Made by a program: the position numbers and the translations under genes. 64,000 nt of DNA from Octopus sinensis. Its lineage: Eukaryota. The stretch lies in NCBI RefSeq assembly GCF_006345805.1, contig NC_043001.1, positions 67,766,001 through 67,830,000 of the forward strand. Reading direction: 5' to 3'. Below the pieces are notes generated by a model. It was not told the origin of the DNA and did no database searches. It saw only the letters and a program-made list of their open reading frames with translations. Shown piece after piece: positions 1,333-58,456 of the stretch (positions are counted from its first letter, which is position 1; each line of letters begins with the position of its first letter).

Positions 1333-1369
<37 letters not shown>

Positions 1370-1929
1370 ACATACAAAGAAACTACAATAACGCCAAAGA
1401 GGGAAACTCCACAAGGTCGACCAATTTGCAAGAAATATCAGCCAAATCACATACTACCATTTTAAAGATCAGACCCGACAATGTAGTCCTAGATAAAAAA
1501 AAAAAGTGACTCCCTTCAATATATACATGGACCACCCTAACACTGACTCCACCCGAATGAAAGAAAGTGAGAGAGAAAGAGAGGATTGAGTGTGTATAGA
1601 GAAGCCGCAAAAAGTGACATCATGCCATAACAACCATGACGTCATCGTTGTGTCCTACGTATACATACACACACACATGCATATATTTATACAAATCAAC
1701 ACACGCACACACGTGTGTGTGTGAAACAACCCTGCTCGAACCCTCGAAAAATGTGTTTAAAGCTGTATCATTTCCGTCGACATAAAGCAAATCTAGCACG
1801 TGAACCTCTTGTCAAAACTTCTCGCTTATGAGCTCCCTACCCCATCATCTCTTGGATCAGGGACTTACTCGTGATGTATGTTAATCTCTCTCTCTCTCTC
1901 TCTTTGATCTACGTACTATATCGACTCTA

Positions 1930-2700: not shown

Positions 2701-3523
2701 GTTGAAAAGTTTCAGATCACATCTCAGGTCTGAGAAGAACTCCTCCCCTAACTCCTCCAACCATTTCCGAAGTCCCTCTAAATGTAGTCCAGACTAACGG
2801 TTTTAGTGATGCGAAATGTTTACAGTAAAGAATTGAAACAGGATCACAGACTTAGTTAACTGGTAGACAGACAGATAGAGTGGGGGGGGGTGAGAGACAG
2901 GGTTTCAGCTAAGTAATATAGAAATGTCAGTTGGTAAATGAACGGGAAGTGCGGAAACAAGACAACAACAGACAAGAGATGGATTAAAGGAAATTAATAC
3001 AAACTAACAAGTATAATAGTGTGGTTAAAAAACCACAAGGTTCCCTGTTCGATTCCTCTGAGTGGTACTTTTGGCAAGTACTTTAACCATAGTTTTGAGC
3101 TGATCAATATTTTGACAGACGGAAACTGCAGAAGTGCGTGTGTACCGAGTAAAACTGTCCCTCAACTTTAGACAATACTTTAGTCATTCGACAAATAGTG
3201 ACGGATAAATACCAGACAGAAAAACTACAAGGAGTCGAGATGATCAATTTTTTAATCGACCATAGTTGAAGGTGGTGATCCACTTTAATGATTAAAACTA
3301 GTAAAAAATATGAAGCAGATTTACAAAGAACTAGAATTAACCAGGTAAATGTAAACGAGAAAAAAGGAGAAATAAAAAGTAAAGCTGTGGCTACAAACTG
3401 TTCAACAATTGTTTATACGAATTTGTAAATCTTTCGTGGGTACATCGAAATATAGACAAATCATTATTAAACTTTCTGGAGAGATATTGATTTTACTTTA
3501 GATGGTCTTCATCTAGGTGTTTT

Positions 3524-3648
<125 letters not shown>

Positions 3649-4402
3649 TGTACAAGCAGCTGTCAGTCGCAAAGTTGTATGGTTTTGTAGCATGTACTAT
3701 TCTCTCGCTAATTGTTTTAGGTAACTATGTAGTCTGGAATAGTCATAGACACTCGTCTCAAGGCCTCTTAACTCTTGACCCAGAATGCGGACAGCTACAA
3801 GAAGTAAGGGTGCTGCGCTAGTACTCTGGCTGGTCTGTGTAAGCAATGTGAACCTCCTGAGATGTGGAACAAGGGCTAAGTTTAGCCTTGCATGAAAAGG
3901 CTACACTGCTACTGAATGGATAAATATATGCAGTTTAATCATTGCTTCACCCATTTTCCGACAGTTAGAAGAGATGAGGAATGTGTGTATTGATAGCCAA
4001 ATAGTAGAGAGAAATGAGCCAGATCTCAGGAAACGACATAGCGATGTGGTACTACGTTGTGGACCAAGCGCCCGTAGAGGGAGAGAGGGAGCTACGTAGA
4101 ATTAACACCATATTTCGACATATTTCCAACGAAACGTGGAAGCTGTTCGTTAACATAAGACGAAATAAAGCTGCAACTACTACTGCTGGTATCAATACTA
4201 AATACTACCACTACACATACTAGAGAGGGAACCCCTTTACATGGCCATTCCACTTTGCTAGAGTTAGCCGCCAAATCTTCTCCAAACCTTACTTGTAGTA
4301 GAGATTATTTTATTTGAAACTAATTCCTCTTTCAAAATAATTAAATCAGAAGAATGAAACACCTGAATGTTATAATAGCTTCCAGCGCGCGCGCACAGAG
4401 AG

Positions 4403-4448
<46 letters not shown>

Positions 4449-4764
4449 GTTTTGTTGCGGCATGATTTTATTCAGCAAAATATTACTACAGATGAGTGAC
4501 ACACTTAATGACTTGAATAATTTCGTAATAAAACATATTCGGCAGAAGTGTCGACCTGTCCTTCTATACATACTCTCATACATATAGTGAGTGTGTGTAT
4601 ACACATACATACTGTCAGCTAAAGTTAGTATTGGCAACAGTTTGGTCTTTCTCGATGGAAATAAGAAAAATAAGTGTCATGTCTTGGGCATTCTTGCATA
4701 ACTTATTGTTTAGTACCAGGTCAGCCATAAGGGATCCAGCTATGACCTTACTGTTTATTTTGTA

Positions 4765-5125
4765 TAGGCGTAGCTGTGTGGTAAGAAGTTTGCTTCCCGA
4801 CCACATGGTTTTGAGATTCAGTCCCACTGTGTGGCACCTTGGACAAGTGTCTTCTACTGTAGCCCCGGACCGACCAAAGCCTTGTGAGTGAATTTGGTAA
4901 ACGGAAACTGAAAAAAGCCCGTTTTGTGTGTGTATGTTTGGTTACCCCACCCATCCCGCTTTACAACCGGTGTTTGTGTCACCATAACTTAGCGGTTCGG
5001 CAAAAGAGAGACCAGTAGAATAAGCACCATGTTTTTTTTTTTAAATAAGTATTGGGGTCAATTCATTCAGCTAAAATTTGAGGTGGTGCAGTCTAATGAC
5101 TGAAACAAGTAAAAGGTAAAAGGAA
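4765..5125 (+). mobile_element. tRNA-derived SINE family A
   Basis: A-box-like tagctgtgtggt and B-box-like gattcagtccc, body ggcaccttggacaagtgtcttctact…ccgaccaaagcc, tail gactgaaacaagtaaaag. Confidence 0.85.
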
Positions 5126-8100
5126 AAAAAAATTAGAGTAGCGAACTGGCAGTTAGAGCGTTGGAAACAAGGTCGAATAAAATGCCTTGCAGTGTTTCTC
5201 CTGGATCTACATTCTGGCTTCAAGTTTTACCTTGGCCTTCTTGGGTGGTAACCTGACCCGTCAACGGTTTAACACCACCACCTGATACGTTTGGCACCTT
5301 TAGTGGAGTTCATATTCCTGCAAATATTCGGTATAGCTCTCCAGTTGGGGATACCTATCTTCACCTCTGAATAAGATATAAAAAAAACAAAATGTCCAAC
5401 ACCTTCTCAAACAAGATCCTATTAACTTTTAAAAATAGGAGGGGGAGATATGACAGCTAATCCCAACATTCATTTAGCTTCATTTAGCTTTCCGAGAGAA
5501 GGATCGTTGATTCAAGACTGCAACCAAATTTGTCACTGTTACTAGCACACACACACTCCCGCACGGATAAAGTCTTTGGAACAAGGAATCAAGAGAAATA
5601 TCGAAACTAAATGTTTTTGTTAATCTTCAGTCAACTGGCTCTGTTTCTCAGCTCGCATGGAATCCATATCACAGGAAATTGGTCTCAACTAACAGTAACA
5701 ATTTAACATACTAAGACAAGATCAGATATTTTCAGAGGTAGGAACAGAGGTTATAATCGTTTCAAGTGATATCGGTCTATTAACGGATTTAAGCCCAGAG
5801 TATAAAGTAAGAGAATGGCTAAACCAGCAGAATTCGAACACAGAACCGATAATGTAATGCGGAAATCTATTTTTAATAATAGTGAAACAGAATATGTGGA
5901 AGCCAGTGACGATCTGAGCCGGTAAAGTTATATAATTGCCGCTGTATGAATTATTTCTAATAATAGATTTCTGAGATTGGCACAAAGTCAAATGTTGGCA
6001 GTATCATAACAAGTCTGTCTTAAGCGAATATTTGACTGGAAAGATGAAAGGGGTGTAACTAAATACTATCGCCCTTATGAGAGATATTTTGGCGGGAGAA
6101 TTATAACCGATCAAATAAATGAAAACAATAATTCTTTCTAATTTTAGCTCAAGGCCAGCAATTTCTAGGGAAGGAGTTACTTGATTACATCGACCACAAT
6201 ACTTGACTGGTACTTTATGTTAATGACCACGAAAGGATGAAACGCAAAATCAACCTCGGCGGCATTGGAATTAAGAACGTTAAGAGCAAGAGGAGGAAAT
6301 GTTGCAAAACATTTTCCCCAAAGCTGTAATGTATTGATAGGGCTATAAACACATTGGCGGTGTTTGTCAAGATGTATACGCAAAAACATTCCTGCCACTG
6401 TCTTACTTTTAGGCATAGGGTATCGAGGACTTGGAATGATGGCATTGTGGTTCAAAAATAAAATATCAATAATATAGAGGATTGTCATCTAAAGTAGATA
6501 ATAGTTTAGTAGTTATTGAATGTTTTGTAAATAAGGAACCTCGCTATGACACACACCACTACATCATTTACTAAAATATTAACAAAATATTGTTAGTTGG
6601 CTACAAGATTAATTCAATTATCATTTTAAATAAATAATAAGTCTTGTCTACTATAGGCACAAGGCCAGAATTTTTGAAAGAGGAGGCTAGTCGATTACAT
6701 CGACCCCAGTGATACTTATTTTATCGAACCCGGAAGGATGAAAGGCAGAACAATGTCAGAAAAATTAGTACAGAAAGTATGGAGTCGTTCATCTTTTGTA
6801 AGGAATGAAAAGATAAGTTGGTGCCGGCGGAATTTGAATCTAGGAACAGTACAAGATAGGGACACTCTGGGCAGTTCGCCTGGATGCCCCACGAGTCAAG
6901 AAACTCAATGCTGATGTGTGTATCGAGTTTTGTGCAGGATCACAAGACTGTTTTGATTGGGGATCCATAATATTTGAAGACAATCGAGAGGAGACAAAAT
7001 ATTAGAGGGTAAAAACCAAGAATGAAAGGAAGGTGATGCCGTCTACACTTCCAGTTATGGGAATAGCATCAAAGCATGCTTTAAGTTTAATAAATGGGTG
7101 ACGTGAAGAATACGTACACCCGGTGGTTAGGGTTAGAGTTTTTAATACGCCGAAAACGGGTGGTGTACGTATCCTTTACCTCCGCCCCGTGAGGAATAGT
7201 AAATATTGGATTTGGAGTTCTACGGAGACTTGATGATGGGGAACCTGTCTAGTGCACAGTGAGCTGATTGAACAGGCGTATGATCAAAGGTATTCCATCT
7301 GTGACTATCCCCTCAGTTTACGTGTATGTAGGAATATAGATGTGTTTTCTTTATTACTTCTATCAAGTCAAACGACCAGATAGCCCTCGTTCTGTTGTTT
7401 TTAACATGTAAGAAAGGGAAGAGGTTCGTCACACGGTTTAACTTTAGTGAAGAATTTCGTTATTTTAATAGTTTTCCAAATTTTTTCTTCTTTTTGATTT
7501 CAGACATGACACTGTATCCTCTATATTCCAGCTGGCCATGATTACTGAGTAAAGAAAGAATAAAAATATATCCAAAATGTCCGAAGGTCAGTTGTATGCA
7601 CCCTATACATAAATTTTGTCATATTTTTCAGACAGTTTGTCTAAGATTACATTACAGCATATGTTACTATTTAAAAACACAATTGTATATATTTTGAGGA
7701 CGATTTTGCTGTTATTTCTAGCAAAGCTATCCTCCCTTCGTTTGCAAAATTCTGCATTCATTCGTTTTATGCAAATGGATTTCTGTAATAAAAAAGAGAA
7801 AGAATTTGGCATATCCCAACTTCATAGATCTTCACACATCTTCACACAAACTGCTTTAAAAAAAAATATCAGATATTGCTTACACAAAACACACGTGTGT
7901 GTACATCAACACATTTGCCAAAGTGTATACGATTTTTTTTAGCGGTCTCATTATTAGGTAGCAACAAAGGTTACAGACGTTGTAGCTCGCTATATACACA
8001 TACACACTTTTCGGTACTTTGTTTCAGATCGAGTAAATTTGTACCCACACCACAGAGAAACATCCTTCCCCTATACACTTATATAGTGTCCAAAAAGATT

Positions 8101-11790: not shown

Positions 11791-13149
11791 CCTTGGTCTA
11801 CCAAATAAGGGTACCATAACAAATAAAGACCAATACTTAACAGCAGTAACAACTAAAGATTAATGTTGCCAGACAAAATATAATTCAGAGGTTAAGTCAG
11901 ACAGAGACAGAGTTGTAAGAGATATGTCAAGCACTGGGGTTGATTTAATTAACCATAAACAAGAAACTGGAGTCCCTAAAGCAATCCAAATCCAGTGTTC
12001 TCTTCAATGTCATTCTAGCAATTTCTGTGACAAGCTATGCCAATATTTGCTTTCTCTTTGGTCAAAGATGACCTGCTACATGGTCAACAGTTGGTCTTTT
12101 ATACAATACTAACTGGCCCCATGCCATCAAAAGTGACAGCTAATTGTAGTATAGATAAATAATCACAGATACAAACATCCACATACTTCCTTTGTACACA
12201 CACATAGTTGAAACGCTGTTTGATTTTTCTTTTCAGCATTGAATGTTCACTATCCCACTTCCATTACACACAGACAGCATTTTAACTCTGCATGAGTATA
12301 TGTGTGTATGTAAAAGGGGAATTATGTGAATCACATAATTCCCATTTTACATACACACATATACTCATACAGAGTTGAAATGTTGTTTGGTTTTTTTTTT
12401 TTCACCGTAGAACTTCCATCATCCCACTTCTAAGTTTGCCATCACCCCTGACTTTCTCATTCATATGTTGTGATGGAGAAATACACAAGAGTATTATTAT
12501 AGTCGATTGTCCACATCTGCACCTTGGAAAAAAACATTTCAGCCTTGTTACATAGTATCAACACAGCAAGGCTTTCCAGGTGCAGATCTATTATCTAATG
12601 TGGTATACCAATGCCAAAAGAAGAGAAACTCATAGGGTACTTTTAGTAAGCATACCTTTCTAGTGTTGTACAGATAATGAGATACTGTACTTAAACTATG
12701 TGGCTTTGTTTTTATCACTGTGGCCAAAAAAATGACATCAGATATAACAACTTATAGTATTTATTAACACCTTATCAGAGACTGGGTACACAGAGAGAAT
12801 AATAGCTTAAATTTATTCATAGCATATGCAAACTTGGATAGAGCTGTCCCATTTTGAATAATAGTTAAAATGCCGTTAATGTGAATCTAATAGAAGCATT
12901 ACAGGTATGACTAACTAACTAACTAACTGACTGTATAGTTAAGAAGACTGTTTCCTAGTCACATAGTCTGGGCTCAGTTCCATTGTACAGCACCTTAGGC
13001 AGGTATCTTCTACTATAACCCCAGGTTCACCAAAGCTTTGTGAGAGAATTTGGTAGAGGGAATCTAAAAAAGCCTCTTGTGTGTGTGTAGGCGTGCATCT
13101 CTTCTGTATTTAAACATTCAAATTCTTCCTCTGAAGAAGGAGCTGGTTT

Positions 13150-27793: not shown

Positions 27794-28650
<857 letters not shown>

Positions 28651-28786
28651 TGGGGGGTGGTAGCCATTTCAAGATAAGACGGTCACTTTTAATGTACTTG
28701 AGAGTTCTGACTAGTTTTGCTACATCGCTCACATTTACCCAAAGTAATTGTATTCACATCGTTAATATAAACACAGTGTGTGTATG

Positions 28787-28789: not shown

Positions 28790-28835
<46 letters not shown>

Positions 28836-28893
28836 ATATATATATATTATATATATATATGTATGTATATATATATATGTAATATATTATATA

Positions 28894-28926
<33 letters not shown>

Positions 28927-29103
28927 ATATATATATTATATATTATATTATATAATATTATATATATATATATATTATATATATATTATATATTATATAT
29001 ATATATATTATATATTATATATATATAATATATATATATATTATAATATATATATATATTATATATATAATATATAGATATATTATATATATATTATATA
29101 TAT

Positions 29104-29145
<42 letters not shown>
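28790..29145. repeat. Compound (TA)n microsatellite upstream of SIK
   Basis: About 350 bp of interrupted TA repeat. (TATC)n at 29550-29641 and (TA)n at 29960-30042 are nearby. Confidence 0.95.
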
Positions 29146-29547
29146 TATATATCACTATATGTGTGTGTGTGTCTGTATGCACATGTATGTATCTGTGTGT
29201 ATGTATGACGTATCTGCGTGTGTGAGAGAAAGAAACTGAGAGAGAGAGAGAGAGACTCTTTAATCACATCATTCATAAACAGCGTAGATACGTAATCATA
29301 CATTACGGATATAAACAACACATATACAATCATATATCGCTTATATGAACACAATGTGTGTGTGTGTAAATTAATTTGTATCCAATTTTTCTAACACGAT
29401 AATATATATATATATATATATATATAGTCATACCTCATGTATACACAGTGTATATATGCAGTTATACATAACTGATATAAACACGTTCATATGTAATCAT
29501 ACATCGATTAATATAAACACATTGTACGTATTACCGATATATGGTTT

Positions 29548-29643: not shown

Positions 29644-29955
29644 ACTAGAGGGGAAGAGAGAGATAGATGAAGAAAGAGACAGAGTGGGGAGACAAACAAT
29701 TATATATTGCTAATATAAACATAGTGTATAGTTGTAATGATACATCACTGTTATAAACACTTATTCATGTAATCATGCATACATCGCTGATATAAATAGC
29801 ATATGTAATCTCGCTTTTAACATACTCGGAGTTTAGACTAACTTCAGCCATAACGTTGTATTATACACAATATGTGTAACCACACATGACTACGGGTTTT
29901 GGTGAAGCTCATGACCCGCACGTATACATACATGATATATACAGCCATATACCAC

Positions 29956-30034
<79 letters not shown>

Positions 30035-30185
30035 ATATATATAAATGTTTAAGTAGTTGAATGAATTATCCTAGTATGGATAATTCGGTTAACCGATACC
30101 CGGGTAGCAAATTTACGTCAGAAAGCACGGTTGAAACTACATGCCAAGGGCAGAAATCACGTGGTTTCGTGTGGAAATTTGTGTC

Positions 30186-32455
30186 TTTTTTTACTATAGA
30201 TAAATGAAAGAATGGAGTCGAACGGCGATTTAACAAAATTCCTTTATTCTCGACATATGTTTCGAAGACTGCATATTCCTAATTCCGAAGGAATAAAGGG
30301 TGCATTATGCCGTCTTCTCATCAGGAAAGACAAGGAACCTATGTCAGCATCATGATGAACAAAAACTTTTAGATGACTGCCCACACGGAGTCCATAGTGA
30401 TAATGAGTGTTTCTTTAAAATAGTCCGTTATAAGCAGTGACGTCAAAATTGGTGAGATGGATAAGATTCTCAAAAGTTCAAGAGTTCAAAAATGGTTGGA
30501 AGGGGAAAGATCTAAGAATAGGGGTGTGACAGAATGCAAGTCGTATGTATGGTGATGCGTTGTTGTTTGCTTCTGCCAATGAGATTGAGTGCCTATGTGT
30601 GTGTATGTATATAACTGCATTTGTGTCTATGTGTGTGCATGATTGTTTGTGTGGGGGGATGAATGCCAAATACATCTAGTGGTGAAGCGACAGGTTTGTG
30701 TCTGTGACTTTGATTGTGCTTATGATAGAGAGAGGGAGAGGTAGAGAGACAAAGGTAGGACATACCCCAACGAATTTGGTAGTAGGCCTTCAAGTAACGT
30801 AGTATAAAAAAATTGTCTATGGTGTTGTTGTAGATGTGGAACCAAATTATTAAATTCAAGGAGCTTATCTATATTAATCATCATTCATATGAGTGGAAGG
30901 CGTGTTTCTTCCAGTGCATGCATCTATAGGATTTTTCTACCATTGTGTTTACAAAAGGGAATTTGGCGAAAAGTATATAGAAAAGCTCAGAATTACAGAC
31001 GGCACAATATTTTCTGCCCTTATCAAAAGGAAAGGATACAGACAATATGGACCATTCCAGCTTGAAAGTTATATTGCTGTCCTTAAGACGCCAAACTAAT
31101 TTACTTAGTCCAGTACTTTCTTGTTTCCTCTTATCTCGGAAAGTTGAATAATGATTGAAAATCCTCTGGGATAATTTAGAAGTAGTAGCTCCAACATAGA
31201 AGAAGACATCGGTACCGGAAGAAACCCTACACTGGTAAATGGAATTTCTAATTTTGGAATTACTGGACAAGAACTTTAATCTGTTAGGGTTTACCTCCGA
31301 GACTAAGACGGAGTTTTTATTATGATTGCTGTTAATATAACTGCTAGCACTGACCACTATACTATTTCTATTATTGTTACTATTATTAATTGTACTATCG
31401 CCTGTAATATCCCTGACTATAGAAATGCTGCCGTTGTTATCATCAATACTACCACTGTTATTAGAAATGCTGTCGTTGTTACCACTAACACTACTACTGT
31501 TAATAATCCGACTAATATTATTATTAATATTACCACTGTAAATGCCAACGCTGTTGCTATTATCAATACTATTTCTATTATTATTATTGTGTGTTTGGTT
31601 GGAATTGGTAAGAATAGTGTTGTAACTCCTGGGTGAAGAATCCTTGTTTAGCAGCTTGTTATTATGGGAGGCAATAATTTGCGATAGATTTCTAGTGTTG
31701 GAGAATGCAATCCTTACCTTATGCGAATTGATAGTAGAGTAATGCCTAGAATTCCTGGGAAAGTTCCTAGTTACGGCTTCACGGAACTGCAAAGGAAGGT
31801 TTGACTTGATTTGTTTTCCGAAAGGTATGACAAACCAGATATAGTTTTTAGTGGACTTAGAATTGTTCAAAGTGTTACCAGTTACATTAAAGGGAATATT
31901 TCTGTGCTGGAAAATTGGGGTTGGTTGCCGATTGCCTCCCCTGGTCCGTATATTATTTTTCTTAAGTATAGTGGTGCCGACGTTGTTAGAGCTGAAATCA
32001 TTATTCTCACTATTTCTATTGTTATTAGTTTTCTTATCCTGAGAAGTATATATAGGTTTAGAATGGGCCGGGTCGTTATATGATACTTTATCTCTATAAC
32101 CGGCTTTTGACAAGGCGGCGTTATAAAATTCCGCTTTCTGGTTAAAGATGTCGACATTAGCAGACAATTTTGACAGTCTTAAGGAAATATTTTAAACTAA
32201 ATTATCGGTAACAGTTTTGGCATGGTTACTGAAAACGCTGATATATTTAAGATTAGTAGAAGGCTTATGATAAGGGAAGTATGAATTATTCTGAAGATTT
32301 AGGGTAACATCTAAGAAGTTGGCTTTAGTTAATTCGTCGTCAAAAACTATGCTCAAACCCATTCTGCTAAAAAATCTAGCTAATCTGTTCTTAATCTTCT
32401 GTATCCTATTGTTCGGAGCATTCTGGAGGTAAAGTAGACAATCGTCTCGACATAT
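30186..32455 (-). mobile_element. Penelope-like retroelement (Neptune-type), 5'-truncated: RT C-terminal half, linker, GIY-YIG endonuclease, 3' UTR/pLTR with hammerhead
   Basis: The frame runs from 32455 (ICRDDCL...NFLDVTLNL...YHKP...SNH) through one in-frame TAA at 32194-32192 into ORF 32167-30881. That ORF contains IWFVIPF, IIASHNNKLL, IYQCRV...YVGATT...RIFNH...F (GIY-YIG), CAVC..E and RCMH. Downstream are the hammerhead, AATAAA (30248-30243) and an A-run at 30192-30186. Confidence 0.9.
30239..30337 (-). ncRNA. Type I hammerhead ribozyme (minimal stem III, Penelope pLTR type)
   Basis: Minus strand reads TTCCTT-GTC-TTTC-CTGATGA-GAAGAC...GTCTTC-GAAA-C-ATAT-G-TC|GAGA-ATA-AAGGAA. Core CUGAUGA is at 30324-30318 and GAAA at 30263-30260. 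Stem II is GAAGAC/GTCTTC extended by GCATA/TATGC. Stem III is the palindrome ACATATGT. The GUC cleavage triplet is at 30254-30252. Stem I is 4 bp, a 3x3 internal loop, then 6 bp. Confidence 0.88.
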
Positions 32456-33617
32456 CTATAACTGGTTGAAGTCCTTTATTTTCGGCCGAAAAGAGGTTGT
32501 CACAGTTGTAGGACAGCACTCTTCACTCTATAAGATGACGTCTGGTGTACCACAGGGATCTGTTCTTGGCCCCATTTTATTTGTTGCATATGTTAATGAC
32601 ATAGATGCCAACTTAAAGAATGCCACAGTGCTGAAATATGCAGATGACATCAAGCTGTACCTCGAAATAAAGAGGTCAGATCCTGTACACTATAGATCTC
32701 TATTGCAAGCAGACCTGGACACAATGCAGCAATGGATCATGGACTGGCAACTCAAGCTGGCTGTGGACAAATGTACCACCATGCATTTTGGGAGGAAAAA
32801 CCCAGCGTCCACCTATTCCTTCCACAACACTAATCTCAAAAAGTCTTCGTGTGAACGTGACCTGTTTACAAAAGGGAATTTGGGTGTTATTGTCGACAGT
32901 GATTTGCGTTGGACAAAACACATCGCTAAAATTGTCTAGAAGGCTGAGGGTGTCGTGGCATCACTCACCAAATCCTTTGTGAGCCGCTCTCCGACTAACT
33001 ATCTGCGGCTTTATATAGCTATAGTAAGACCTCACCTGGAATTTGCATCACCGGTCTGGAACCCCTTCTTGCCCAGGATATCAATCGTCTGGAAGCCGTT
33101 CAGCGATGTGCAACCAACAGAATACCCTCCATCAGGCATTTGCCATATTCTGAACGCCTTACTTCCCTGGGCATGGACACATTGAAACTCCGACGTCTGG
33201 CAGCTGACTTGGCAGACACCCATAAAATTATCAACCATCTTACGAACAATAACTCTGAGCACCTTTTCAAACTCCACCCGTCTAACACCCGTGGACATAT
33301 TTACAAAGTCAGAAAGCAGCACAGCTCCCATGACTTTAGGAAACATTTTTTCACGCTAAGAGTTGCTGAAGCATGGGACAAATTGCCGGCATCGGTTGTT
33401 AGTTGTCGGAGCACTGCATCCTTCAAAACTTCCATGCTTCCTGAGATTCGCCAACACTACACCTGATTTTCTCCACTCCATACACACACAAGCATGTATT
33501 TGACTCATACATTTTCCAGACATTTGTACATTACTGCATACACTTTATACGCACTTTCTGACAAATTGTGGTGCACCTGAGCACTGTATACAATAATTTA
33601 ATTATTATTATTATTAT
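32456..33617 (+). mobile_element. CR1-group LINE, 5'-truncated RT and 3' end with (ATT)n tail
   Basis: SGVPQGSVLGPILF, KYADDIKLY, DKC..MHFG, RPHLEFASPVWNP, LRRLAADL, RKHFFTLRVAEAWDKLP. Contains one stop and frameshifts. Ends in an attattattatt tail near 33600. Confidence 0.92.
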
Positions 33618-34059: not shown

Positions 34060-34130
<71 letters not shown>

Positions 34131-34330
34131 TACAAACAACTGAAATTTTATGCGTGGCCATAAAAGTTCTCTAATCTTTTTGTGTGCCTAGAGTCAAAGT
34201 GAGACAACAGCTGTGTCAGTGATGCTTATTGGGGCAGGAAAGAACAGGTGGCAACATCTGTCCTCTTGTCTCCAAATTAAAGAAATTCTGTGACTTAATT
34301 GAAAATTTCTGTTATTTTATCAACATACCA

Positions 34331-35019
34331 TGGCAGTCAAATGTTACTGTAATTTAGCCCCAGGAAACATCGTCTCCAGCTGGCTATACGACACAATATC
34401 TGTGTCCTTATATTTTTGACCAAGAGAGTTTAGCATCCACACTCAGCATATCTGTGTATCGCGATTTCTGGGTTATTTCTGTTCATCGACACAGAACAAC
34501 TGTTCGGCCAGAGGTGGCGCTGCTAAACTCTTGTTCGAAATATATAGTTTTCATAGTGGCACGCAGTCACTGATCTAATGAGATAGAAAATTTCTATTTG
34601 TAAATCTCTCAACGAGAGATATTGTCGTATAGCCAGCTAGAGACGATGTTTCCTAGGCTAAATACCAGTAACATTCGACTGCCACGTTATGTTGGCAAAT
34701 AATCTTTACTCTAGAGTACTGTTACTGAATATCTTTCATTGAGAAATTTACAAATAGACATTTTCTATTTTATTAGATCAGTGACTGCGTGTCACCTTGA
34801 AAACATTATATTTCGAACAAGAATTTAGCACCGCCACCTCTAAACAAACGTGCTGATAAAGGGAAACAACTCAGAAATCGCGATACACAGATATTGTTTT
34901 GTACTGAGTGGGGATGCTAAACCCCATTGGTCAAAAATATAAGGACATATATATTGTGTCGTATAGCCAGCTAGAGACGAAGTTTCCAGGGGTTAAATAA
35001 TAGTAACATTCGACTGCCA
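34331..35019. mobile_element. MITE-like foldback structure (about 690-bp imperfect palindrome with a third terminal-repeat copy inside)
   Basis: The left arm 34331-34612 is the reverse complement of 34739-35019. An extra inverted copy of the ~66-bp terminus (…atacgaca…/…cgactgcca) lies at 34619-34684. No clear TSD. Confidence 0.75.
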
Positions 35020-35488
35020 GTTCAGGGAAATCTTTGATCCTGGAGATTATCTCTTTTTATTTAGAGTTAGTCACAACTACTACAAGGCGTTTGTCTACTT
35101 TTTGTCGAAGTGAAATTGAATTTGAATAAACGAAGTTCACAACTTGTACAATATCTAATACATCTTTGTCTTATATTATCCGTATCCATGTCACTGGCAC
35201 TCTGAGTCTTTACCCTTAGGTCAGTTTTGTTACACACACACACACCACACACACACACACAACACACACACACACACACACAAACACATACAAACAACTG
35301 AAATTTTATGCGTGGCCATAAAAGTTCTCTAATCTTTTTGTGTGCCTAGAGTCAAAGTGAGACAACAGCTGTGTCAGTGATGCTTATTGGGGCAGGAAAG
35401 AACAGGTGGCAACATCTGTCCTCTTGTCTCCAAATTAAAGAAATTCTGTGACTTAATTGAAAATTTCTGTTATTTTATCAACATACCA

Positions 35489-36176
35489 TGGCAGTCAAAT
35501 GTTACTGTAATTTAGCCCCAGGAAACATCGTCTCCAGCTGGCTATACGACACAATATCTGTGTCCTTATATTTTTGACCAAGAGAGTTTAGCATCCACAC
35601 TCAGCATATCTGTGTATCGCGATTTCTGGGTTATTTCTGTTCATCGACACAGAACAACTGTTCGGCCAGAGGTGGCGCTGCTAAACTCTTGTTTGAAATA
35701 TATAGTTTTCATAGTGGCACGCAGTCACTGATCTAATGAGATAGAAAATTTCTATTTGTAAATCTCTCAACGAGAGATATTGTCGTATAGCCAGCTAGAG
35801 ACGATGTTTCCTAGGCTAAATACCAGTAACATTCGACTGCCACGTTATGTTGGCAAATAATCTTTACTCTAGAGTACTGTTACTGAATATCTTTCATTGA
35901 GAAATTTACAAATAGACATTTTCTATTTTATTAGATCAGTGACTGCGTGTCACCTTGAAAACATTATATTTCGAACAAGAATTTAGCACCGCCACCTCTA
36001 AACAAACGTGCTGATAAAGGGAAACAACTCAGAAATCGCGATACACAGATATTGTTTTGTACTGAGTGGGGATGCTAAACCCCATTGGTCAAAAATATAA
36101 GGACATATATATTGTGTCGTATAGCCAGCTAGAGACGAAGTTTCCAGGGGTTAATAATAGTAACATTCGACTGCCA
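35489..36176. mobile_element. Second copy of the MITE-like foldback structure (within the tandem duplication)
   Basis: Near-identical to 34331-35019, offset 1158 bp. Confidence 0.75.
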
Positions 36177-36387
36177 GTTCAGGGAAATCTTTGATCCTGG
36201 AGATTATCTCTTTTTATTTAGAGTTAGTCACAACTACTACAAGGCGTTTGTCTACTTTTTGTCGAAGTGAAATTGAATTTGAATAAACGAAGTTCACAAC
36301 TTGTACAATATCTAATACATCTTTGTCTTATATTATCCGTATCCATGTCACTGGGCACTCTGAGTCTTTACCCTTAGGTCAGTTTTG

Positions 36388-43404: not shown

Positions 43405-46400
43405 CTGTTCATAATTCTTTTTGCCCACAAGGGGCCAACACAGAGACAATACAAAATACGGGTCGATAAAAACGAATGAATTTTACTAAGAAATGGACAA
43501 CTTAAAAAATTTCTGAAAATATAGCGTATGATTTAAACAAACAAGCCCCGTTCCACCACTGAGATCTTTTAATTTTTCTTTATTCTTTACACTTACGCCT
43601 GGTCATTTATACCCAGCATTCGTGCCACTTTCTTTCATTTTTTGTTATATATCGCAGACGACAGACATCTCCTCTCCAGCCGTATTTTCCTTTTGAGATG
43701 GAAAGTAAAGAAGGTTACTAAACCTTGGTTGGAGATGAAGACGCCTGTCACTACTCCTTTCATTCGAGACTTCCATACTGCTTCTTTCGCCATAGCAATT
43801 ACAACGAGAAAACAAACCTTTCTTCCTTGTTAAAGGAAGACGGCAGAGTAATCTTAATGATTGATTCAGACGACAGTTGTACGCTTCCCATAGCAGCTGT
43901 TCGACATAAATCCACAATTTCGAGTGCAGGACAATTTCTCTGTCCTGCTTACATCTAGGACAAATCTGCGAAGATTGACCTCCATGCCTTGCGAGTTTAT
44001 CACGAACAGGTAAGACTCGTCTGTAACACTGCCAAGCCAGGGACTTTTGGAAATTATCTGAGGATCTTGTCTGGAATGTACGCCGGAACAGTCCGGCTAG
44101 TTGACCATCGCTGAGATCCAGGGCCTCTCCCAGGGTATCATCACACTTTGCCTCTACCAACCCTCTATAGAACGAAACCCTGACCACCGGCGTCACCCGT
44201 GCGAGAGAGACGATGAAAGGCTTGGCTGCATTTGGCCTGCCAAGGCCCTGCTTTCGGTCTACACCTAATCCAAGATTCCAGTCCACTAAAATTAGTGAAC
44301 TTAGGAAAATTTGCCTCGACGAACAGAGACCACACCTATTCCCCATCCAGCTAGAGCCAGAGATGTCTTATCCTCAACGCATGTCTGCGCATCTTTATCC
44401 ACAGCATTCCTAATCCACCCTTTAACAGTTTTTGGCAGCAGATAGAGCGCTTTATTTCTCCCCAACAAAAAGCAGAAGCGTAGTCTCTCCAACTTGTTTA
44501 GCCAAAAATTGGGGCAAGGCACGACGGTTAGGCGGTAGGTAATCACAGATACGATAAGCACATTTGTGACCCAGGGATAGTCACCGCTTAGACCAGGTCT
44601 GAGTTCGGAGGATCACCCTGCTCGTCATCTCGCTCCAGTTCTTCTCTATCTGGAAGTCCGGACCAAACCAAACTCCTAGCATTTTAACCGGGCCCTCCGT
44701 CCAACGCCCCACGACGTTGTTGGGAGGTATCGACTTGCCCTTCCAGGTGCGAGTTGCAAGCCGACTGACTTCTCACGGTTAATTTTTACTCCTGCCACCG
44801 CCTCGTATTCTTTAATGGCCTCACCTATCCTTTGTAGGTGTTTGACCTCGGATACGATGATGGTGATGTCATCCACGAACGCGGATACAAATCTGCCATA
44901 ACTTAGATCTCGCGGGACGCCCTTCATAGCCTCCAACTTCCGCAGCAAGGATTCGAAAGCCAATACGTACAAGAGTGGAGAAAGGGGACATCCTTGCCTG
45001 ACCGAGCGCTTGATGGAGAACGGCTCCGGAAGGAAACCGTTCACCCGAACGATCGAATCGATGTTGCTGTAAAGAGTAGTGATCCAACTAAGAAAGCTGA
45101 GGGGCAGCCCGAATGCCGCAAGGACCGACACCAGATACTGATAGTCAACCCTGTCAAAAGCTTTAGACTGGTCTAAATGGACCAGAGTCCCACCCTTGCC
45201 AGGAATTTTATTCACCTTCTCTATGGTATAGCGTATAAGATTGAGATTGTCCTGGACGATCTGCCGGGAATGGCACTCGTTTGCGCCTTCCCGACGAGTC
45301 CACCCGCGACACGCACCATCTTTTTGCTAGTACCTTGGTCAAAGTCTTCAGTTCTGTGTTTAGCAGAGTGATGATCTGGAAATTATCTACAACGTTCGTC
45401 TTGTTTGGGTCCTTTATTAGCAGTATCATTAACCCCGGCTCACAGACCTGGGTATAAACCAACTCTGCTCCCAGTGGCAAAGTAGGTATCCAAACAAGTC
45501 TGGCATACTATAATATAGCTCGTAAGGAAGGCCATCAAACCTCAGCGACTTGTCCACGCCGCAGTCCGACAAAGCCTCCTCTACCTCCACAGTTGTGATC
45601 GGTCCTTCACAGCTTTTCGATTCCCACCCCGAGAGACACGGCAACCCAGCGAGGAAGTCCGTAAAGTCCCTCCTGCACCCGGTTCACCGCTCCTCCCGAA
45701 AAGCTGAGCGAAATGCTCCTGAAAGACCTTACACATCTCATCGGTTTCGTTTACCAAGTTCTCCTGTTGGCTCGGCAAAGACTTTAGTGACGTTATTGTC
45801 ACGTTGCATCTCTATCACACGGGCCCAGCTGGCCGCCTTAATTCCTCCCTGTCCTATTGCACGCTGCTTTGCCCTGACTATGCACCCTTAGTGTTGTTAG
45901 GAGACTTTAACTCAATCTGCGATGCACGCGTGTATTGTGTTGGCTCGTGTACGGATAGGAGGGGAAACCCGTGACTCCTCGATTTGCTTAGGCATTTTCA
46001 GCTGGAAGATAGGTATAGACTAGAAAACCCGGATCGCTCCATTATGGACATGGATGAATAACGACGAGTCTTCTAGGTCTTATTTAGACAGGTTATTCGT
46101 TAGGAAAATAGATAAAGATTTAGTTAGGTGTCCACAGTTCCATTACGACATCTACAGTGATCGCAAACTTGTGATCTGTAAGTTTGACATAGATAAATTA
46201 TGTAGGTAAGGTCCCGGCTACTGGAAACTTAACAAGTCCTTGTAGCAGATGAGGAGTACAGGAGTCGGATTAGGTTGCTAGTGATGAGGGCATTATAAAC
46301 AACAATTAGTGGTATGCCCTCAAAAGTTCGAGTCCATTAGATATAGCAAAGCATTAGTCGCTAAGAAAAATAGAATAGAAAGGAACTTAACTAAGGATTT

Positions 46401-55452: not shown

Positions 55453-56682
55453 TAATTTGAACTAGCTTACAAAACAACCACAATTGGACTGGCCAAATAT
55501 CTCGAAATATCGAATGACTGGATGCTAAAGCTCGTGGAAAATCACGAGAGACGAAAGAAGCTTCATTCTATCATAAAGGAAAGCAAAAAATTTGCTATTG
55601 ATCTCGTGCAGGATACCCAAACTGAACAACCCGAGGGAAGTACGGCAACTATTGTTGCAAAGAAGGTGAAAATGATGGCAATGAAGAAAGCGCACGAGCA
55701 ATTGGCTGATAGGTGGGAGGAGAGAAACCTCTGCACGGCAAATATGTGACCCGCAGCAAACAAGCTGATGTTGACCAGAAGCAAACCCATCAGTGGCTAC
55801 GGAGCTCAGGGCTAAAAGCAGAGAGCGAAGGTTTCATCCTGGCTGCTCAAGATCAAAGCCTATTAACCCGGAACTACCAGGCCAATGTGATGAAAAATGG
55901 AGCAGACCCAAAATGCCGATTCTGCAACGACATGATTGAAACAGTGGACCACCTAATCTCTGGATGTAAAGTCTTAGCACCAGTGGAGTATAAATTAAGA
56001 CATGACAGAGTTGGCCAATATCTCCACTGGCTAATAAGTCGGCATTACAATATCAAAACTGCCGACAAGTGGTATAATCACCACCCTGAGGCTGTAACTA
56101 AAGGAGAAAATGTAACCATTCTGTGGGACTTTCCAGTACATACAGACCGAACCATCAAGGCCAATAAACCAGATATTGTTGTGAAAGACCAAAACAATAA
56201 AGTTTGCTTATTGATCGATATGAGCATCCCCTGTGATCATAATATCTCAGCGAAAGAGTTTGACAAGCTCAGAAAATATAAAGACCTACTCATTGAAATT
56301 GAGAAAATGTGGCATCTCAAGGCGGTTACAATACCAGTGATCGTAGGAGCACTAGGAATAATCAAGAAGGGAACCGAAAATTATATGAGAATGATCCCTG
56401 GCTTACCATCCCTGCAAGAAGTGCAAAAGATTGTCTTAACTGGTACATCACACGTATTGAGAAGAGCATTGTCGATGTGAGAACTGTTGGTGCTCATGTA
56501 TTTTAATTTAACTTAAAAAAAAAAAAAAAAAAATGAACGAACTACTGAGTTTGGTTTAATGGCCTACCAATGTATACTATGAGTTTCTTTGCCCTAGGAG
56601 TCGGGAAGACACTCGGCAAGAAATGGAAGCAAATTTGAAAGAAGAAAAAAAAAGTAATAATAATAATAATAATAATAATAAT
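55453..56682 (+). mobile_element. R4/Dong-clade LINE, 5'-truncated (CCHC plus RLE endonuclease), flanked by (TAA)n
   Basis: WLRSSGLKAESEGFILAAQDQSL, CRFC...ETVDHLISGC, ILWDF, KPDIVV...LIDMSIP, IPVIVGALG. Stop at 56480. (AAT)n lies upstream (55400-55452) and (TAA)n downstream (56655-56682). Confidence 0.92.
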
Positions 56683-58456
56683 TTATTCTTTTATTGGCCA
56701 CAAGGGCTAGTATAAATATACATAAAATTACATGTAACAACATAAAAGACGAACACAAAACGATACAATGGGTTTTCAAATCAAGTAAACATTATAAAAA
56801 ACAATGAAAAGTTAAAATTAAACAAAAATAAAATCTCCCAATATGGGGTGGCGCTTTAAGGTTACTCGTGGAAAACCCCACAAAAAGCCACTTGTGCTTG
56901 ATCAACAGAGCAAGAGCCCTTCTCCTTTTATTTCTTCACAGGTGTATGCTCAGAATTTGTCCTTTCACACTGGCCAATCTTCTAACATTCACCCTCTTTT
57001 CAACAAACTTGCTAGAAGGCAACACTTCCCTTTCCACCCTCACTTTCCTCTTCAAGTGAATCTTGCAAAAGTTGATGAGGGTTTGGCCAAAGAAGAAAGT
57101 GTCTGACTTTAGCCCTTTCAGACGAGTCCACCATACTACCTCTCTCGCTACAGCCACCAGACAATTAAAAATTGCCTGCTGCTCCTCGCCAAAGGATGGT
57201 GGCGGGGCAATCTTCAATATGGATTCAGCTGGTAGCCAGATCCGTCCCACACGTGACATCAGGTGTTCAACATAAACCCACAGGTCAGCAATGCTCAGGC
57301 ACTGGACTAGGGCGTGCAGAACGGTTTCGTCTCTCTGCGCACTCTTCGGGCAGGCCCGGCTGACGGCAATTCCGTGCCTGTAAAGTTTATCCCGAAAGGA
57401 CAGCGCCCCTCGGTAGCACTGCCAGGCAAGGGATTTCTGGAAGTCATCCATAGGCCCAGGCCCGAAATTTCTCCGAATCAGGCCGGTTAGTTGATCCTCG
57501 TCGACGCCTAGAGTTTCTCTGAGAACATCGTCGCACTTCCCTTCCACTAGCCCTCTATAGAACGTTAAAGTGGAACCACCACCGATTGCATTGCCCGCCT
57601 GGCGAAGGGCTGTGAGCGCTTGACAGCACTCGAGGTGCCAAGCGTCCCTCCTCTGTATACTCCTAATCCAGGTTTGCAGCTCAGTCAAAAAGACGAGCTG
57701 TGGAAAAATGAGTCTGAAAAACAGCAACCATACCTGCTCACCGTCAAGGAAACGCTGGAAATGCTGAGCGCATGTCTGTGCCTCAGCAGATGGATCGCCT
57801 GACCAGTGGTACCTGACCCTTCCACAAAAAGTCAAAGAGCAAGCGTACCAGCTTGGCCAACAAGCGGTCGGGACAAGGGACGATGGTCAAGCGGTAATAG
57901 ATGACGGATGCGATGTACGCATTCACCACCTCCGCTCGACCTTTCAGGGACAGCTTCCTCTCGGCCCATTTCTGGGTGAGATTGGCCACCCTGCTCGTCA
58001 CCTGGTCCCAATTTTTCGCCACCTGGAGGTCTGAACCGAACCAGACCCCGAGCAATTTAAACAGACCACCTGCCTAGCACCCCACGACACTGTTGGACGG
58101 CATGGACTTGCCTCTCCAGGTGCCTAGTTACAAGCCCACGGACTTTTTCGCGTTAATTTTTGCCCCTGTCACCGCTTCATATTCGTTCAGCGTCTCGCCC
58201 ATCAGGTCAGTGTGCCTGTGGCATAGGCAGACACGCTGTTTCCACCTCCTAGATCGCGCGGGATTGCCCTCGAAGCATCCAACTTGCGCAGTAATGGCTC
58301 GAGAGTCAATACGTACAAGAGGGAGGAGAGAGGGCATCCTTAGCGGACCGAACGCGAGATGTCAAACAGCTCTGAAAGGTGACTGTTCACCTGTATTATC
58401 GAGCAGATGTTGCTGTATAAAGCAGCGATCCACCCGCGGAAGACCGAAGCCGGTGA
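56683..58456 (-). mobile_element. Tx1/L1-clade LINE, 5'-truncated (RT end, C-terminal domain, 3' UTR)
   Basis: SVR.GCPLS, LGVWFGSDLQ, LSLKGRAEVVNAYIASVIYYRLT, FQKSLAWQCYRG.L..RDKLYRHG. Clearly paralogous to the 43.4-47.7 kb element, and shares the 3' terminal ...CCCTTGTGG(C/G)C...AAAAGAAT. Confidence 0.88.

What the first reader, a model, noticed from the sequence alone, without database searches (positions are those of the whole stretch)
30239..30337. Intact hammerhead ribozyme 2.2 kb upstream of, and co-oriented with, the SIK kinase gene
Seen: every catalytic core position is canonical (C3UGAUGA9, G12AAA, G-U-C17). All three stems pair. Stem I has the 3x3 internal loop that normally docks loop II, and stem II is extended with a ~12-nt bulge. 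Stem III is the self-complementary ACAUAUGU. An AATAAA follows the cut site. Established: Penelope-like elements carry minimal type I hammerheads in their pLTRs, and those with short palindromic stem III cleave best as dimers. Inference: the host Penelope ORF is truncated and has a stop, yet the ribozyme looks undamaged and points into SIK exon 1. It could cut read-through or upstream-initiated transcripts, insulating the promoter. If SIK has an upstream non-coding exon, it would act as an intronic self-cleaving element. It could instead simply be a young, unselected insertion. Only one copy is in the window, so dimer activity would have to be in trans.
Basis: partly seen in the sequence, partly recalled or inferred. 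Interest (0 to 1): 0.8.

Follow-up and report, generated by a model that had tools for sequence, protein, structure and literature searches.

The report
Hammerhead ribozyme in a dead Penelope-like retrotransposon
The sequence is a real, intact-looking hammerhead ribozyme, but it is the normal tail-end motif of a broken Penelope-like retrotransposon (Hydra clade) that landed about 2.2 kb upstream of an octopus SIK kinase gene, and nothing shows the host uses it.

Summary
On the minus strand at 30337-30239 there is a type I hammerhead ribozyme (HHR) with a fully canonical core and three helices. A relaxed descriptor finds only this site in 64 kb, against 0.007 expected per shuffled window. Rfam does not detect it, probably because helix II is 54 nt in a 45-position model.

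It sits 0.55 kb downstream of a 5'-truncated ORF (32455-30881, one stop). That ORF encodes the end of a reverse transcriptase and a GIY-YIG endonuclease with the hallmarks of Hydra-clade Penelope-like elements (PLEs), and the element ends at a (TA)n run. Two Octopus sinensis paralogues (82% and about 71-76% identity) have the same ORF, 3'UTR, hammerhead and (TA)n layout. They show three compensatory pairs in helix II. Coral-metagenome relatives carry a minimal hammerhead in the same place.

Helix III is the palindrome ACAUAUGU. The monomer is predicted to misfold, while two copies form the classic double hammerhead.

The exaptation idea has no support. Window-private changes are 2/99 in the ribozyme and 38/832 in the ORF (P=0.30). 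One stop in 524 codons implies a young copy, in which an intact core is the neutral expectation. Verdict: a new member of a known kind, of low interest.

The parts
30239..30337 (-). Type I hammerhead ribozyme. Stem I is 30337-30325 paired with 30251-30239. Core CUGAUGA is 30324-30318. Helix II is 30317-30264. GAAA is 30263-30260. Palindromic helix III ACAUAUGU is 30260-30253. C17 is 30252, with the cut at 30252/30251.
   Evidence: Sequence read. It is the only descriptor hit in the window, with 0.007 expected. Fold and dimer cofold. It is homologous to paralogues L001 and L019, with 3 compensatory pairs.
30243..30248 (-). AAUAAA hexamer inside the 3' strand of stem I, 4 nt after the cut site.
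   Evidence: It is kept in L001 (AAUAAUAAAA) and is AGUAAA in L019. A role as a poly(A) signal is inferred, not shown.
30200..30238 (-). Conserved segment after the ribozyme. In paralogue L019 the element ends here, directly at a (TA)n run.
   Evidence: 94.9% identity to L019; alignment A5.
30047..30199 (-). Further 3' extension shared with paralogue L001 only, running to the (TA)n microsatellite. It is either the true 3' terminus or a 'tail', so the 3' boundary is ambiguous between about 30200 and about 30047.
   Evidence: Alignment A2. The segment occurs nowhere else in the window, L001 or L019, apart from an inverted copy of its end across the (TA)n in L001.
29947..30046 (.). (TA)n microsatellite abutting the 3' end of the element. 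This is the preferred insertion target described for Hydra-clade PLEs.
   Evidence: Target preference is from PMC8557442. L001 and L019 also end at (TA)n.
30338..30880 (-). 3' UTR of the element between the ORF stop and the ribozyme. It is poorly conserved and contains CA/TG-rich stretches.
   Evidence: 81% identity to L019 and not alignable to L001.
30881..32167 (-). Open 428-codon remainder of the PLE ORF. It holds the region after the RT (IWFVIPFG...), an N/S-rich linker, and a GIY-YIG endonuclease (IYQ...YVG...R...H...CAVCNSE...N...CMH).
   Evidence: Homologues are P0001 and P0003 (O. sinensis) and P0002 (metagenome). Motifs match the Hydra-clade description.
32168..32455 (-). 5'-truncated upstream part of the same reading frame. 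It starts in RT motif C (ICRDDCLL) and has a single in-frame stop at 32194-32192.
   Evidence: Translation. Homology to L001 starts at 32454-32455.
27914..28048 (-). Context: coding part of SIK-family kinase exon 1 (MVMANS...[29 protein letters not shown], then a GT donor). It is not part of the element.
   Evidence: It sits in a GC-rich island at 27800-28700.

Best explanation
This is the 3'-terminal hammerhead ribozyme of a dead, 5'-truncated Hydra-clade Penelope-like retrotransposon that inserted at a (TA)n microsatellite upstream of an octopus SIK gene.

In the active source element, the ribozyme sits in the conserved 3' module downstream of the RT-endonuclease ORF. PLE insertions are usually partial tandems, so one transcript carries two hammerheads. 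Their palindromic helix III sequences (ACAUAUGU) pair with each other into an 8-bp helix. That creates a double hammerhead which cuts 3' of C17 and trims the RNA. Cleavage is possibly helped by the element's own protein.

This genomic copy has one hammerhead, no functional RT and no partner. I judge it a passenger relic. It looks perfect only because the copy is young and the motif is small. If the region is transcribed on the minus strand, cleavage would be inefficient. It would depend on trans-pairing with transcripts of sister copies carrying the same palindrome, or on PLE protein.

Shown here: the motif, its homology, its position in the element, compensatory changes, the in-silico dimer fold, and the absence of excess conservation. 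Inferred: the tandem/dimer processing role (from the literature), the lack of host function, and weak monomer activity.
For: The motif is canonical and unique in the window, with 0.007 expected by chance.

It is contiguous with a PLE ORF fragment. RT motif C, the post-RT region and the GIY-YIG endonuclease are present, along with CxxC...E...N...CxH. The CCHH motif is absent. The element ends at (TA)n. These are the features of the Hydra clade in PMC8557442, which also states that canonical HHRs lie near PLE 3' ends and are universal in Hydra.

Two O. sinensis paralogues have the same ORF, 3'UTR, HHR and (TA)n layout: L019 at 82% identity and L001 at 71-76%. Between the window and L001, helix II shows 3 pairs changed on both sides, against 0-1 in slid controls. 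One of these (G-C to A-U, 30313/30268) is on the window's own branch.

The ribozyme and the 39 nt after it are the best-conserved part of the family: 94-95% against L019, compared with 86-88% for the ORF and 81% for the 3'UTR.

Distant relatives from coral-type metagenomes carry a minimal HHR 150-200 nt after the ORF. These are L002, L003 and L011 (L016 carries the same motif on the other strand). L002 scores 24.4 bits on Rfam Hammerhead_1.

The dimer MFE of -55.8 kcal/mol is the double hammerhead with an 8-bp trans helix III. Two monomers give 2 x -25.3. The monomer MFE mispairs the core, and the hammerhead-shaped monomer is only -21.9.

Neutral expectation: one stop in 524 codons gives d of about 1.7% and P(core intact) of about 0.78. 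Window-private changes are 2/99 against 38/832, P=0.30.
Against: No Rfam hammerhead model matches the window copy. I attribute this to the 54-nt helix II but did not prove it.

Only three family copies were available, so consensus and covariation rest on few sequences.

The orthologous locus in other octopus species, RNA-seq data and cleavage assays could not be examined. Host use is therefore unsupported rather than excluded.

The octopus family lacks the CxCX5C linker that defines Hydra-clade endonuclease linkers; it has an N/S-rich stretch instead. The RT N-terminal hallmarks (RWK, DKT) cannot be checked in truncated copies.

The 3' boundary is ambiguous, at about 30200 or about 30047.
Confidence: 0.85

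Rival explanations
1. Exapted host element. The ribozyme, perhaps together with the AAUAAA in stem I, cuts or terminates read-through or upstream-initiated minus-strand transcripts and so insulates the SIK promoter. Alternatively it acts as an intronic self-cleaver if SIK has an upstream non-coding exon.
For: It is co-oriented with SIK exon 1 and 2.19 kb upstream of it. The core and all helices are intact while the ORF is truncated and has a stop. The window's ribozyme has fewer private changes than the ORF (2.0% against 4.6%), and the two it has compensate each other.
Against: The difference is not significant (P=0.30). It is also expected from selection in the active element lineage before insertion, because the sister copy L019, at an unrelated locus, shows the same pattern. 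An intact core is the neutral expectation for so young a copy. The architecture is the dimer type, with no partner within 64 kb. Single PLE min-HHRs showed no detectable cleavage in vitro (PMC4209133). There is no evidence that the site is transcribed or lies inside the SIK transcription unit, and the GC island begins about 1.5 kb further downstream.
Confidence: 0.04
2. A non-autonomous retrozyme unit (a small hammerhead-bearing repeat mobilised by PLEs) rather than part of a PLE copy.
For: Animal type I hammerheads are often carried by non-LTR retrozymes related to PLE pLTRs (PMC7229834 and bioRxiv 10.64898/2026.07.22.740005).
Against: There is a single copy and no tandem array. It is collinear with the PLE ORF and 3'UTR in three independent loci.
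Confidence: 0.03
3. A chance match to the hammerhead consensus in AT-rich DNA.
For: No Rfam hammerhead hit, even at E<=10.
Against: 2 of 300 shuffled windows give any hit to a much laxer descriptor. The block is conserved in paralogues with compensatory pairs. It is at the expected place in a PLE.
Confidence: 0.01

Closest known systems
Hammerhead ribozymes of Penelope-like elements (Cervera & de la Pena 2014, PMC4209133; dimeric min-HHRs)
   Same: Type I topology and a canonical core with G10.1-C11.1. Helix II is larger than usual. Helix III is very short with a palindromic loop, which implies dimer activity. The location is in the terminal repeat / 3' region of a PLE.
   Different: Helix II is far longer: 54 nt and about 19 bp with internal loops, against the 6-8 bp described. 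There is no unpaired nucleotide between A9 and G10.1. Stem I is long (4 bp, a 3x3 loop, then 6 bp). Only one copy is present because the element is 5'-truncated.
Hydra clade of C-terminal EN+ PLEs (Craig et al. 2021, PMC8557442)
   Same: A short element with a single ORF. The C-terminal GIY-YIG lacks CCHH. CxxC and CxH flank the catalytic E and N. Insertion is at (TA)n. A canonical HHR lies near the 3' end. The clade is reported from molluscs among other phyla.
   Different: The octopus family has an N/S-rich low-complexity linker where Hydra elements have CxCX5C. The coral-metagenome relative P0002 does have CNCRSKDNC. The RT N-terminal hallmarks cannot be seen in these truncated copies.
Poseidon PLE of Anolis carolinensis (PAc) hammerhead (PMC11167929)
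   Same: A PLE-borne hammerhead whose cleavage is weak by itself.
   Different: The PAc ribozyme overlaps the ORF start in the pLTR and was shown to be protein-assisted and dispensable for insertion in vitro. Nothing has been tested for the octopus copy.
Host-conserved hammerheads (amniote intronic HH9/HH10; rodent Clec2 3'UTR discontinuous HHR) - from my own knowledge
   Same: A hammerhead lying in or next to a host gene and co-oriented with it.
   Different: Those are stable monomeric ribozymes conserved at orthologous loci across species. Here the motif is the dimer type, is embedded in a recognisable young transposon copy, and its orthologous conservation is untested.
Rfam RF00163 Hammerhead_1
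   Same: The same core and type I topology. The coral relative L002:1408-1452 aligns to the whole 45-position model (24.4 bits).
   Different: The window copy gives no hit at all. Even the minimal relative stays below the gathering score of 34.

Membership tests
Hammerhead ribozyme, type I | Conserved core: C3 U4 G5 A6 N7 G8 A9, G12 A13 A14, A15.1-U16.1, and H17 (not G) | tested here: met
   All positions are canonical at 30324-30318, 30263-30260, 30253 and 30252.
Hammerhead ribozyme, type I | Three helices around the core, with helix I open and helices II and III closed, and a G10.1-C11.1 closing pair | tested here: met
   Stem I has 4+6 bp. Helix II has about 19 bp and is closed by G30317-C30264. 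Helix III has 2 bp plus an AUAU loop.
Hammerhead ribozyme, type I | Score at or above the gathering threshold of an Rfam hammerhead covariance model | tested here: not met
   No hammerhead hit at gathering score on 64 kb or at E<=10 on 29800-30800. The likely cause is a 54-nt helix II against a 45-position model. This cause is inferred.
Hammerhead ribozyme, type I | Site-specific self-cleavage 3' of position 17 | not testable with these tools
   Needs in vitro transcription of a monomer and a tandem dimer, with a core-mutant control.
Hammerhead ribozyme, type I | Loop I / loop II tertiary contact | not testable with these tools
   A 3x3 internal loop in stem I and internal loops in helix II exist. 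No docking can be inferred from sequence.
PLE-associated dimeric hammerhead | Very short helix III with a palindromic sequence able to form an extended intermolecular helix | tested here: met
   ACAUAUGU is a perfect 8-nt palindrome. The cofold MFE of -55.8 kcal/mol is the double hammerhead with an 8-bp trans helix III.
PLE-associated dimeric hammerhead | Lies in the terminal (pLTR / 3') region of a PLE | tested here: met
   It lies 544 nt after the ORF stop and 40-190 nt from the element's end. The layout is the same in L001 and L019.
PLE-associated dimeric hammerhead | A second hammerhead nearby (tandem or pLTR pair) to form the dimer in cis | tested here: not met
   There is only one descriptor hit in 64 kb. 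The copy is 5'-truncated and has no upstream pLTR.
Hydra-clade Penelope-like element | C-terminal GIY-YIG endonuclease lacking the CCHH motif between GIY and YIG | tested here: met
   IYQCRVSSGTDVFFYVG has one Cys and no CCHH. P0002 has none.
Hydra-clade Penelope-like element | [quoted passage not shown] | tested here: met
   The window has CAVCNSE...VN...CMH, L001 has CNLCNSE...CPH and P0002 has CDLCLTE...CRH.
Hydra-clade Penelope-like element | CxCX5C linker upstream of the endonuclease | tested here: not met
   It is present in P0002 (CNCRSKDNC). In the window, L001 and L019 copies it is replaced by an N/S-rich stretch.
Hydra-clade Penelope-like element | Insertion into (TA)n | tested here: met
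   A (TA)n run abuts the 3' end in the window (29947-30046), L001 and L019.
Hydra-clade Penelope-like element | RT hallmarks (RWK, DKT, divergent RT4) and phylogenetic placement within the clade | not tested
   All octopus copies in hand are truncated at or after RT motif C, and no tree was built.
Host-exapted hammerhead | Fewer substitutions in the ribozyme than in the rest of the element on this copy's own branch | tested here: inconclusive
   2/99 against 38/832 window-private changes, Fisher P=0.30.
Host-exapted hammerhead | Presence and conservation at the orthologous locus in other species, and inclusion in a host transcript | not testable with these tools
   Only exon 1 of SIK is in the window. 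The window ORF is not on record. No eukaryotic genome or RNA-seq search is available.
Non-LTR retrozyme | Tandem array of short hammerhead-bearing units without an ORF | tested here: not met
   It is a single copy, collinear with a PLE ORF.

The most novel reading that the evidence does not exclude
A transposon-derived, dimer-type hammerhead with an AAUAAA built into stem I has been kept by the host as a transcriptional boundary upstream of the SIK promoter. It would cleave and terminate read-through transcripts, with sister-copy RNAs supplying the dimer partner in trans.
Probability: 0.04. Interest if true: 0.55.

Novelty: new member of a known kind. Interest (0 to 1): 0.15.

Why it matters
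It matters little beyond annotation. It shows that octopus genomes carry a Hydra-clade PLE family whose hammerhead has an unusually long helix II, supported by covariation, and which Rfam models miss. NCBI names fragments of this family 'myb-like protein I' and 'DDB_G0288805-like'. For the scan, the lesson is that an intact hammerhead next to a gene is the default state of a young PLE copy. It is not evidence of exaptation. If host use were nevertheless shown, it would be a rare case of a dimer-type transposon ribozyme recruited for promoter insulation.

Tried and rejected
- Rfam at gathering score on the whole window and at E<=10 on 1 kb gave no hammerhead hit. All hits were microsatellite artefacts such as mir-297.
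- Pfam on the 428-aa ORF gave no GIY-YIG or RT hit. Classification therefore rests on homologues and on motifs from the literature.
- A simple pattern with helix II of at most 36 nt missed the site and returned only chance hits.
- I looked for a second copy or a pLTR in the window by repeat search and BLAST and found none.
- An exact look-up of the window ORF in public assemblies, to name the species, found nothing on record.
- I searched for further SIK exons, to build a query for the orthologous locus. Only exon 1 lies in the window. With intron 1 longer than 28 kb the gene may well exceed the 100-kb limit for DNA retrieval, so I dropped the orthology test.
- No supplementary files of PMC8557442 are held.
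- A second, distant PLE fragment in L001 (170-1243) has no hammerhead downstream.
- I first placed the 3' end of the element at about 30205. Alignment to L001 extends it to the (TA)n at about 30047, while L019 supports about 30200. This is left ambiguous.
Full report

Yes. Reading the minus strand gives the following layout.
- Stem I 5' strand: 30337-30325.
- Core C3UGAUGA9: 30324-30318.
- Helix II: 30317-30264, closed by G10.1-C11.1.
- G12AAA: 30263-30260.
- Helix III ACAUAUGU: 30260-30253.
- C17: 30252, so the cut falls between 30252 and 30251.
- Stem I 3' strand: 30251-30239.

Stem I has 4 bp, a 3x3 internal loop, then 6 bp. An AAUAAA (30248-30243) lies inside its 3' strand.

Helix II is not a stem with a 12-nt bulge. 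It is 6 bp, a G.A mismatch, 5 bp, a 6x2 loop, 3 bp, a 2x1 loop, 5 bp and a UUC loop.

I wrote a relaxed hammerhead descriptor. It requires the core, G10.1-C11.1, at least 4 bp in helices I and II, and at least 2 bp in helix III. It finds exactly this one site on both strands of the 64-kb window, and hits only 2 of 300 dinucleotide-preserving shuffles, a mean of 0.007.

Rfam reports no hammerhead, either at gathering thresholds on the whole window or at E<=10 on 1 kb around the site. A plausible reason is the 54-nt helix II set against a 45-position Hammerhead_1 model. That reason is inferred, not shown.

SIK exon 1 is confirmed on the same strand. The ATG is at 28048. The peptide is ...[29 protein letters not shown], followed by a GT donor after 27914. 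The best solved-structure match is SIK3 at E=6e-8. The ATG is 2,191 nt downstream of the ribozyme.

**2. What is it part of?**

On the minus strand, a 428-codon ORF (32167-30881) lies upstream of the ribozyme. Read through one stop (32194-32192), the same frame continues up to 32455. There it begins abruptly inside RT motif C, 'ICRDDCLL'.

Its homologues are two Octopus sinensis proteins and one metagenome protein.
- P0001 is annotated 'myb-like protein I'.
- P0003 is annotated 'DDB_G0288805-like'.
- P0002 carries the RT end, an IWFNPPYS region, CNCRSKDNC, and a GIY-YIG domain ending in CDLC..E..N..CRH.

The window protein has IYQ...YVG...R...H, CAVCNSE...N...CMH and no CCHH. Craig et al. 2021 (PMC8557442) define the Hydra clade of Penelope-like elements by these features:
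- a C-terminal GIY-YIG without CCHH;
- a CxCX5C linker;
- CxxC and CxH around the catalytic E and N;
- insertion into (TA)n;
- readily detected canonical hammerheads.

They report the clade in molluscs among other phyla, and they place PLE hammerheads near the 3' ends. The window element meets all of these except the CxCX5C linker. In the octopus family an N/S-rich stretch replaces that linker.

**3. Related copies**

*L001* is the O. sinensis locus of P0001. It holds a paralogue at 71-76% nucleotide identity with the same order: ORF, 3'UTR, hammerhead block, terminal segment, (TA)n. Its ribozyme is degraded: C11.1 has become G, one more helix II pair is lost, and C17 has become A.

*L019* is the locus of P0003. 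It holds a closer paralogue, 82% identical over 1.85 kb. Its flanks are unrelated, so it is not the orthologue. It also has a single stop in its ORF.

Between the window and L001, three helix II pairs are changed on both sides while staying paired, against 0-1 in slid controls. One of them, G-C to A-U at 30313/30268, lies on the window's own branch. The long helix II is therefore a maintained structure of the family.

Against L019 the identities are as follows.

| Region | Identity to L019 |
|---|---|
| Ribozyme | 93.9% |
| Next 39 nt | 94.9% |
| ORF | 86-88% |
| 3'UTR | 81% |

The 3' module is the most constrained part of the family, as expected if it serves the element.

Fifteen loci from metagenomes encode relatives of P0002. 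Some JGI record names suggest coral samples, but that origin is inferred. Where the region downstream of the ORF is present (L002, L003, L011), a minimal hammerhead lies 150-200 nt after the ORF. Its form is CUGAYGA, a 4-bp helix II, GAAA, then the near-palindrome CUCAGAGU and C. L016 carries the same motif on the other strand. L002:1408-1452 aligns to the whole Rfam Hammerhead_1 model at 24.4 bits, below the gathering score of 34.

**4. How it most likely works**

Cervera and de la Pena 2014 (PMC4209133) report four relevant points:
- metazoan PLE hammerheads sit in both flanking repeats;
- they have a very short, palindromic helix III;
- they appear built to act as dimers;
- single motifs showed no detectable cleavage, and dimers or trimers cleaved weakly.

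The 2024 study of the Anolis Poseidon element found its hammerhead active only with the element's protein, and dispensable for insertion in vitro (PMC11167929).

The folding results here agree.
- The monomer MFE (-25.3 kcal/mol) pairs the core AUG with CAU of helix III.
- The hammerhead-shaped monomer is less stable (-21.9 kcal/mol).
- Two copies fold to -55.8 kcal/mol as a double hammerhead with an 8-bp intermolecular ACAUAUGU helix.

So in the source element, two hammerheads in one tandem transcript would pair and trim the RNA. This step is inferred from the literature.

The window copy is 5'-truncated, has no upstream repeat and has no partner within 64 kb. Any cleavage would need a sister-copy transcript or PLE protein in trans. 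L001 keeps the identical helix III palindrome. In L019 it is ACAUGUGU, which can still pair through G.U wobbles.

**5. Is there any sign of host use?**

With L001 as outgroup, the window's private substitutions are 2 of 99 in the ribozyme and 38 of 832 in the alignable ORF. The two ribozyme changes are the two sides of one pair. That is 2.0% against 4.6%, Fisher P=0.30.

One stop and no frameshift in 524 codons implies roughly 1.7% divergence since insertion, with a wide range of 0.04-9%. At that age, the chance that 15 core nucleotides are all untouched is about 78%. An intact ribozyme beside a lightly damaged ORF is therefore the neutral expectation.

A GC-rich island (45-51% GC against about 30% background) spans 27800-28700 and probably holds the SIK promoter and 5'UTR. 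About 1.5 kb of (TA)n, (TATC)n and other AT-rich DNA separates it from the ribozyme.

Whether an upstream SIK exon exists, and whether the site is transcribed at all, cannot be tested here. The orthologous locus could not be fetched either. Only exon 1 lies in the window, and the window ORF is not on record.

**6. Boundaries**

The 5' end of the fragment is at about 32455. It abuts a 5'-truncated LINE-type RT on the plus strand at 32466-33466 (RVT_1).

The 3' end is ambiguous. L019 ends at '...CATTTAT' followed by (TA)n, which corresponds to about 30200 in the window. L001 shares a further 150 nt or so with the window, up to the (TA)n at 30046-29947. L001 also has an inverted copy of the last 34-75 nt on the far side of its (TA)n. 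Either way, the ribozyme lies within the last 40-290 nt of the element.

**7. Comparison and verdict**

This is a PLE hammerhead of the dimer type, in a Hydra-clade-like element. Both are described kinds. The features particular to this family are:
- the 54-nt helix II, supported by covariation;
- the long stem I with a 3x3 loop;
- the AAUAAA inside stem I;
- the N/S-rich linker in place of CxCX5C.

I file it as a new member of a known kind, with low interest. The host-insulator reading is not excluded, but it has no positive evidence. I give it about 4%.

Noticed in passing
window 32466-33466 (+): A 5'-truncated LINE-type reverse transcriptase fragment (RVT_1, E=7e-17; ...VPQGSVLGP...YADD...) lies head-to-head with the truncated 5' end of the PLE, about 10 nt apart. 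Which of the two inserted first is unknown.
   Followed up: partly
window 34104-36354: Direct repeats spaced about 1.16 kb apart (a 300-nt pair at 100% identity and a 208-nt pair at 99%). They are interleaved with 93-116-nt inverted repeats at about 89% and flanked by (CA)n runs. This looks like a recent tandem duplication of a structured repeat. Its identity is unknown.
   Followed up: no
window 43645-45215 (-), 55713-57835, 62485-63379 (-): More retrotransposon debris. RVT_1 ORFs lie at 44676-45215 and 62951-63379. Weak zf-RVT hits are at 43645-44346, 55713-56480 and 56936-57835. The upstream half of the window is mostly LINE-like fragments.
   Followed up: partly
L001:10001-11056 (P0001) and L019:10001-10789 (P0003), Octopus sinensis GCA_006345805.1: NCBI names these gene models 'myb-like protein I' and 'uncharacterized protein DDB_G0288805-like'. 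Both are fragments of this PLE family's ORF. The asparagine-rich linker probably drew the names.
   Followed up: yes
window 31320-31600 (-), and the same region of L001 and L019: In all three octopus copies an N/S-rich low-complexity stretch stands where Hydra-clade elements have the CxCX5C zinc-finger-like linker, yet the frame stays open through it. The linker is proposed in the literature to guide (TA)n targeting, but these copies still end at (TA)n.
   Followed up: partly
L001:12471-12504 and about 12460-12540: On the far side of the (TA)n that ends the L001 element lies an inverted copy of the element's last 34-75 nt. It is 97% identical to the window's terminus. This suggests a second, extremely 5'-truncated insertion into the same microsatellite in the opposite orientation.
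   Followed up: partly
L001:170-1243 (+): A second, distant (about 35% aa identity) Hydra-like PLE ORF fragment ends about 110 nt before the start of a RecQ4-like helicase gene (1357-5384) and is co-oriented with it. No hammerhead follows it. This is another PLE fragment just upstream of a host gene.
   Followed up: partly
L002:1409-1451, L003:1394-1436, L011:3856-3897, L016 (- strand): Relatives of P0002 from metagenomes (some JGI record names suggest coral samples) carry a conserved minimal hammerhead: CUGAYGA, GUGC-loop-GCAC, GAAA, CUCAGAGU, C. It lies 150-200 nt after the PLE ORF in L002, L003 and L011. Helix III is a 9-nt near-palindrome with a central A.
   Followed up: yes
window 27800-28700: A GC-rich island (45-51% GC in a roughly 30% GC background) covers SIK exon 1 and about 650 nt upstream. 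It is the likely promoter and 5'UTR. It is bounded upstream by about 350 nt of nearly pure (TA)n (28790-29150, GC 1%).
   Followed up: partly
window 29884-30131 and L001:20450-20720: Sub-threshold Rfam hits to mir-297, mir-466, mir-1277, RUF21, a pestivirus 3'UTR and others all fall on TA/TG microsatellites. They are composition artefacts.
   Followed up: yes
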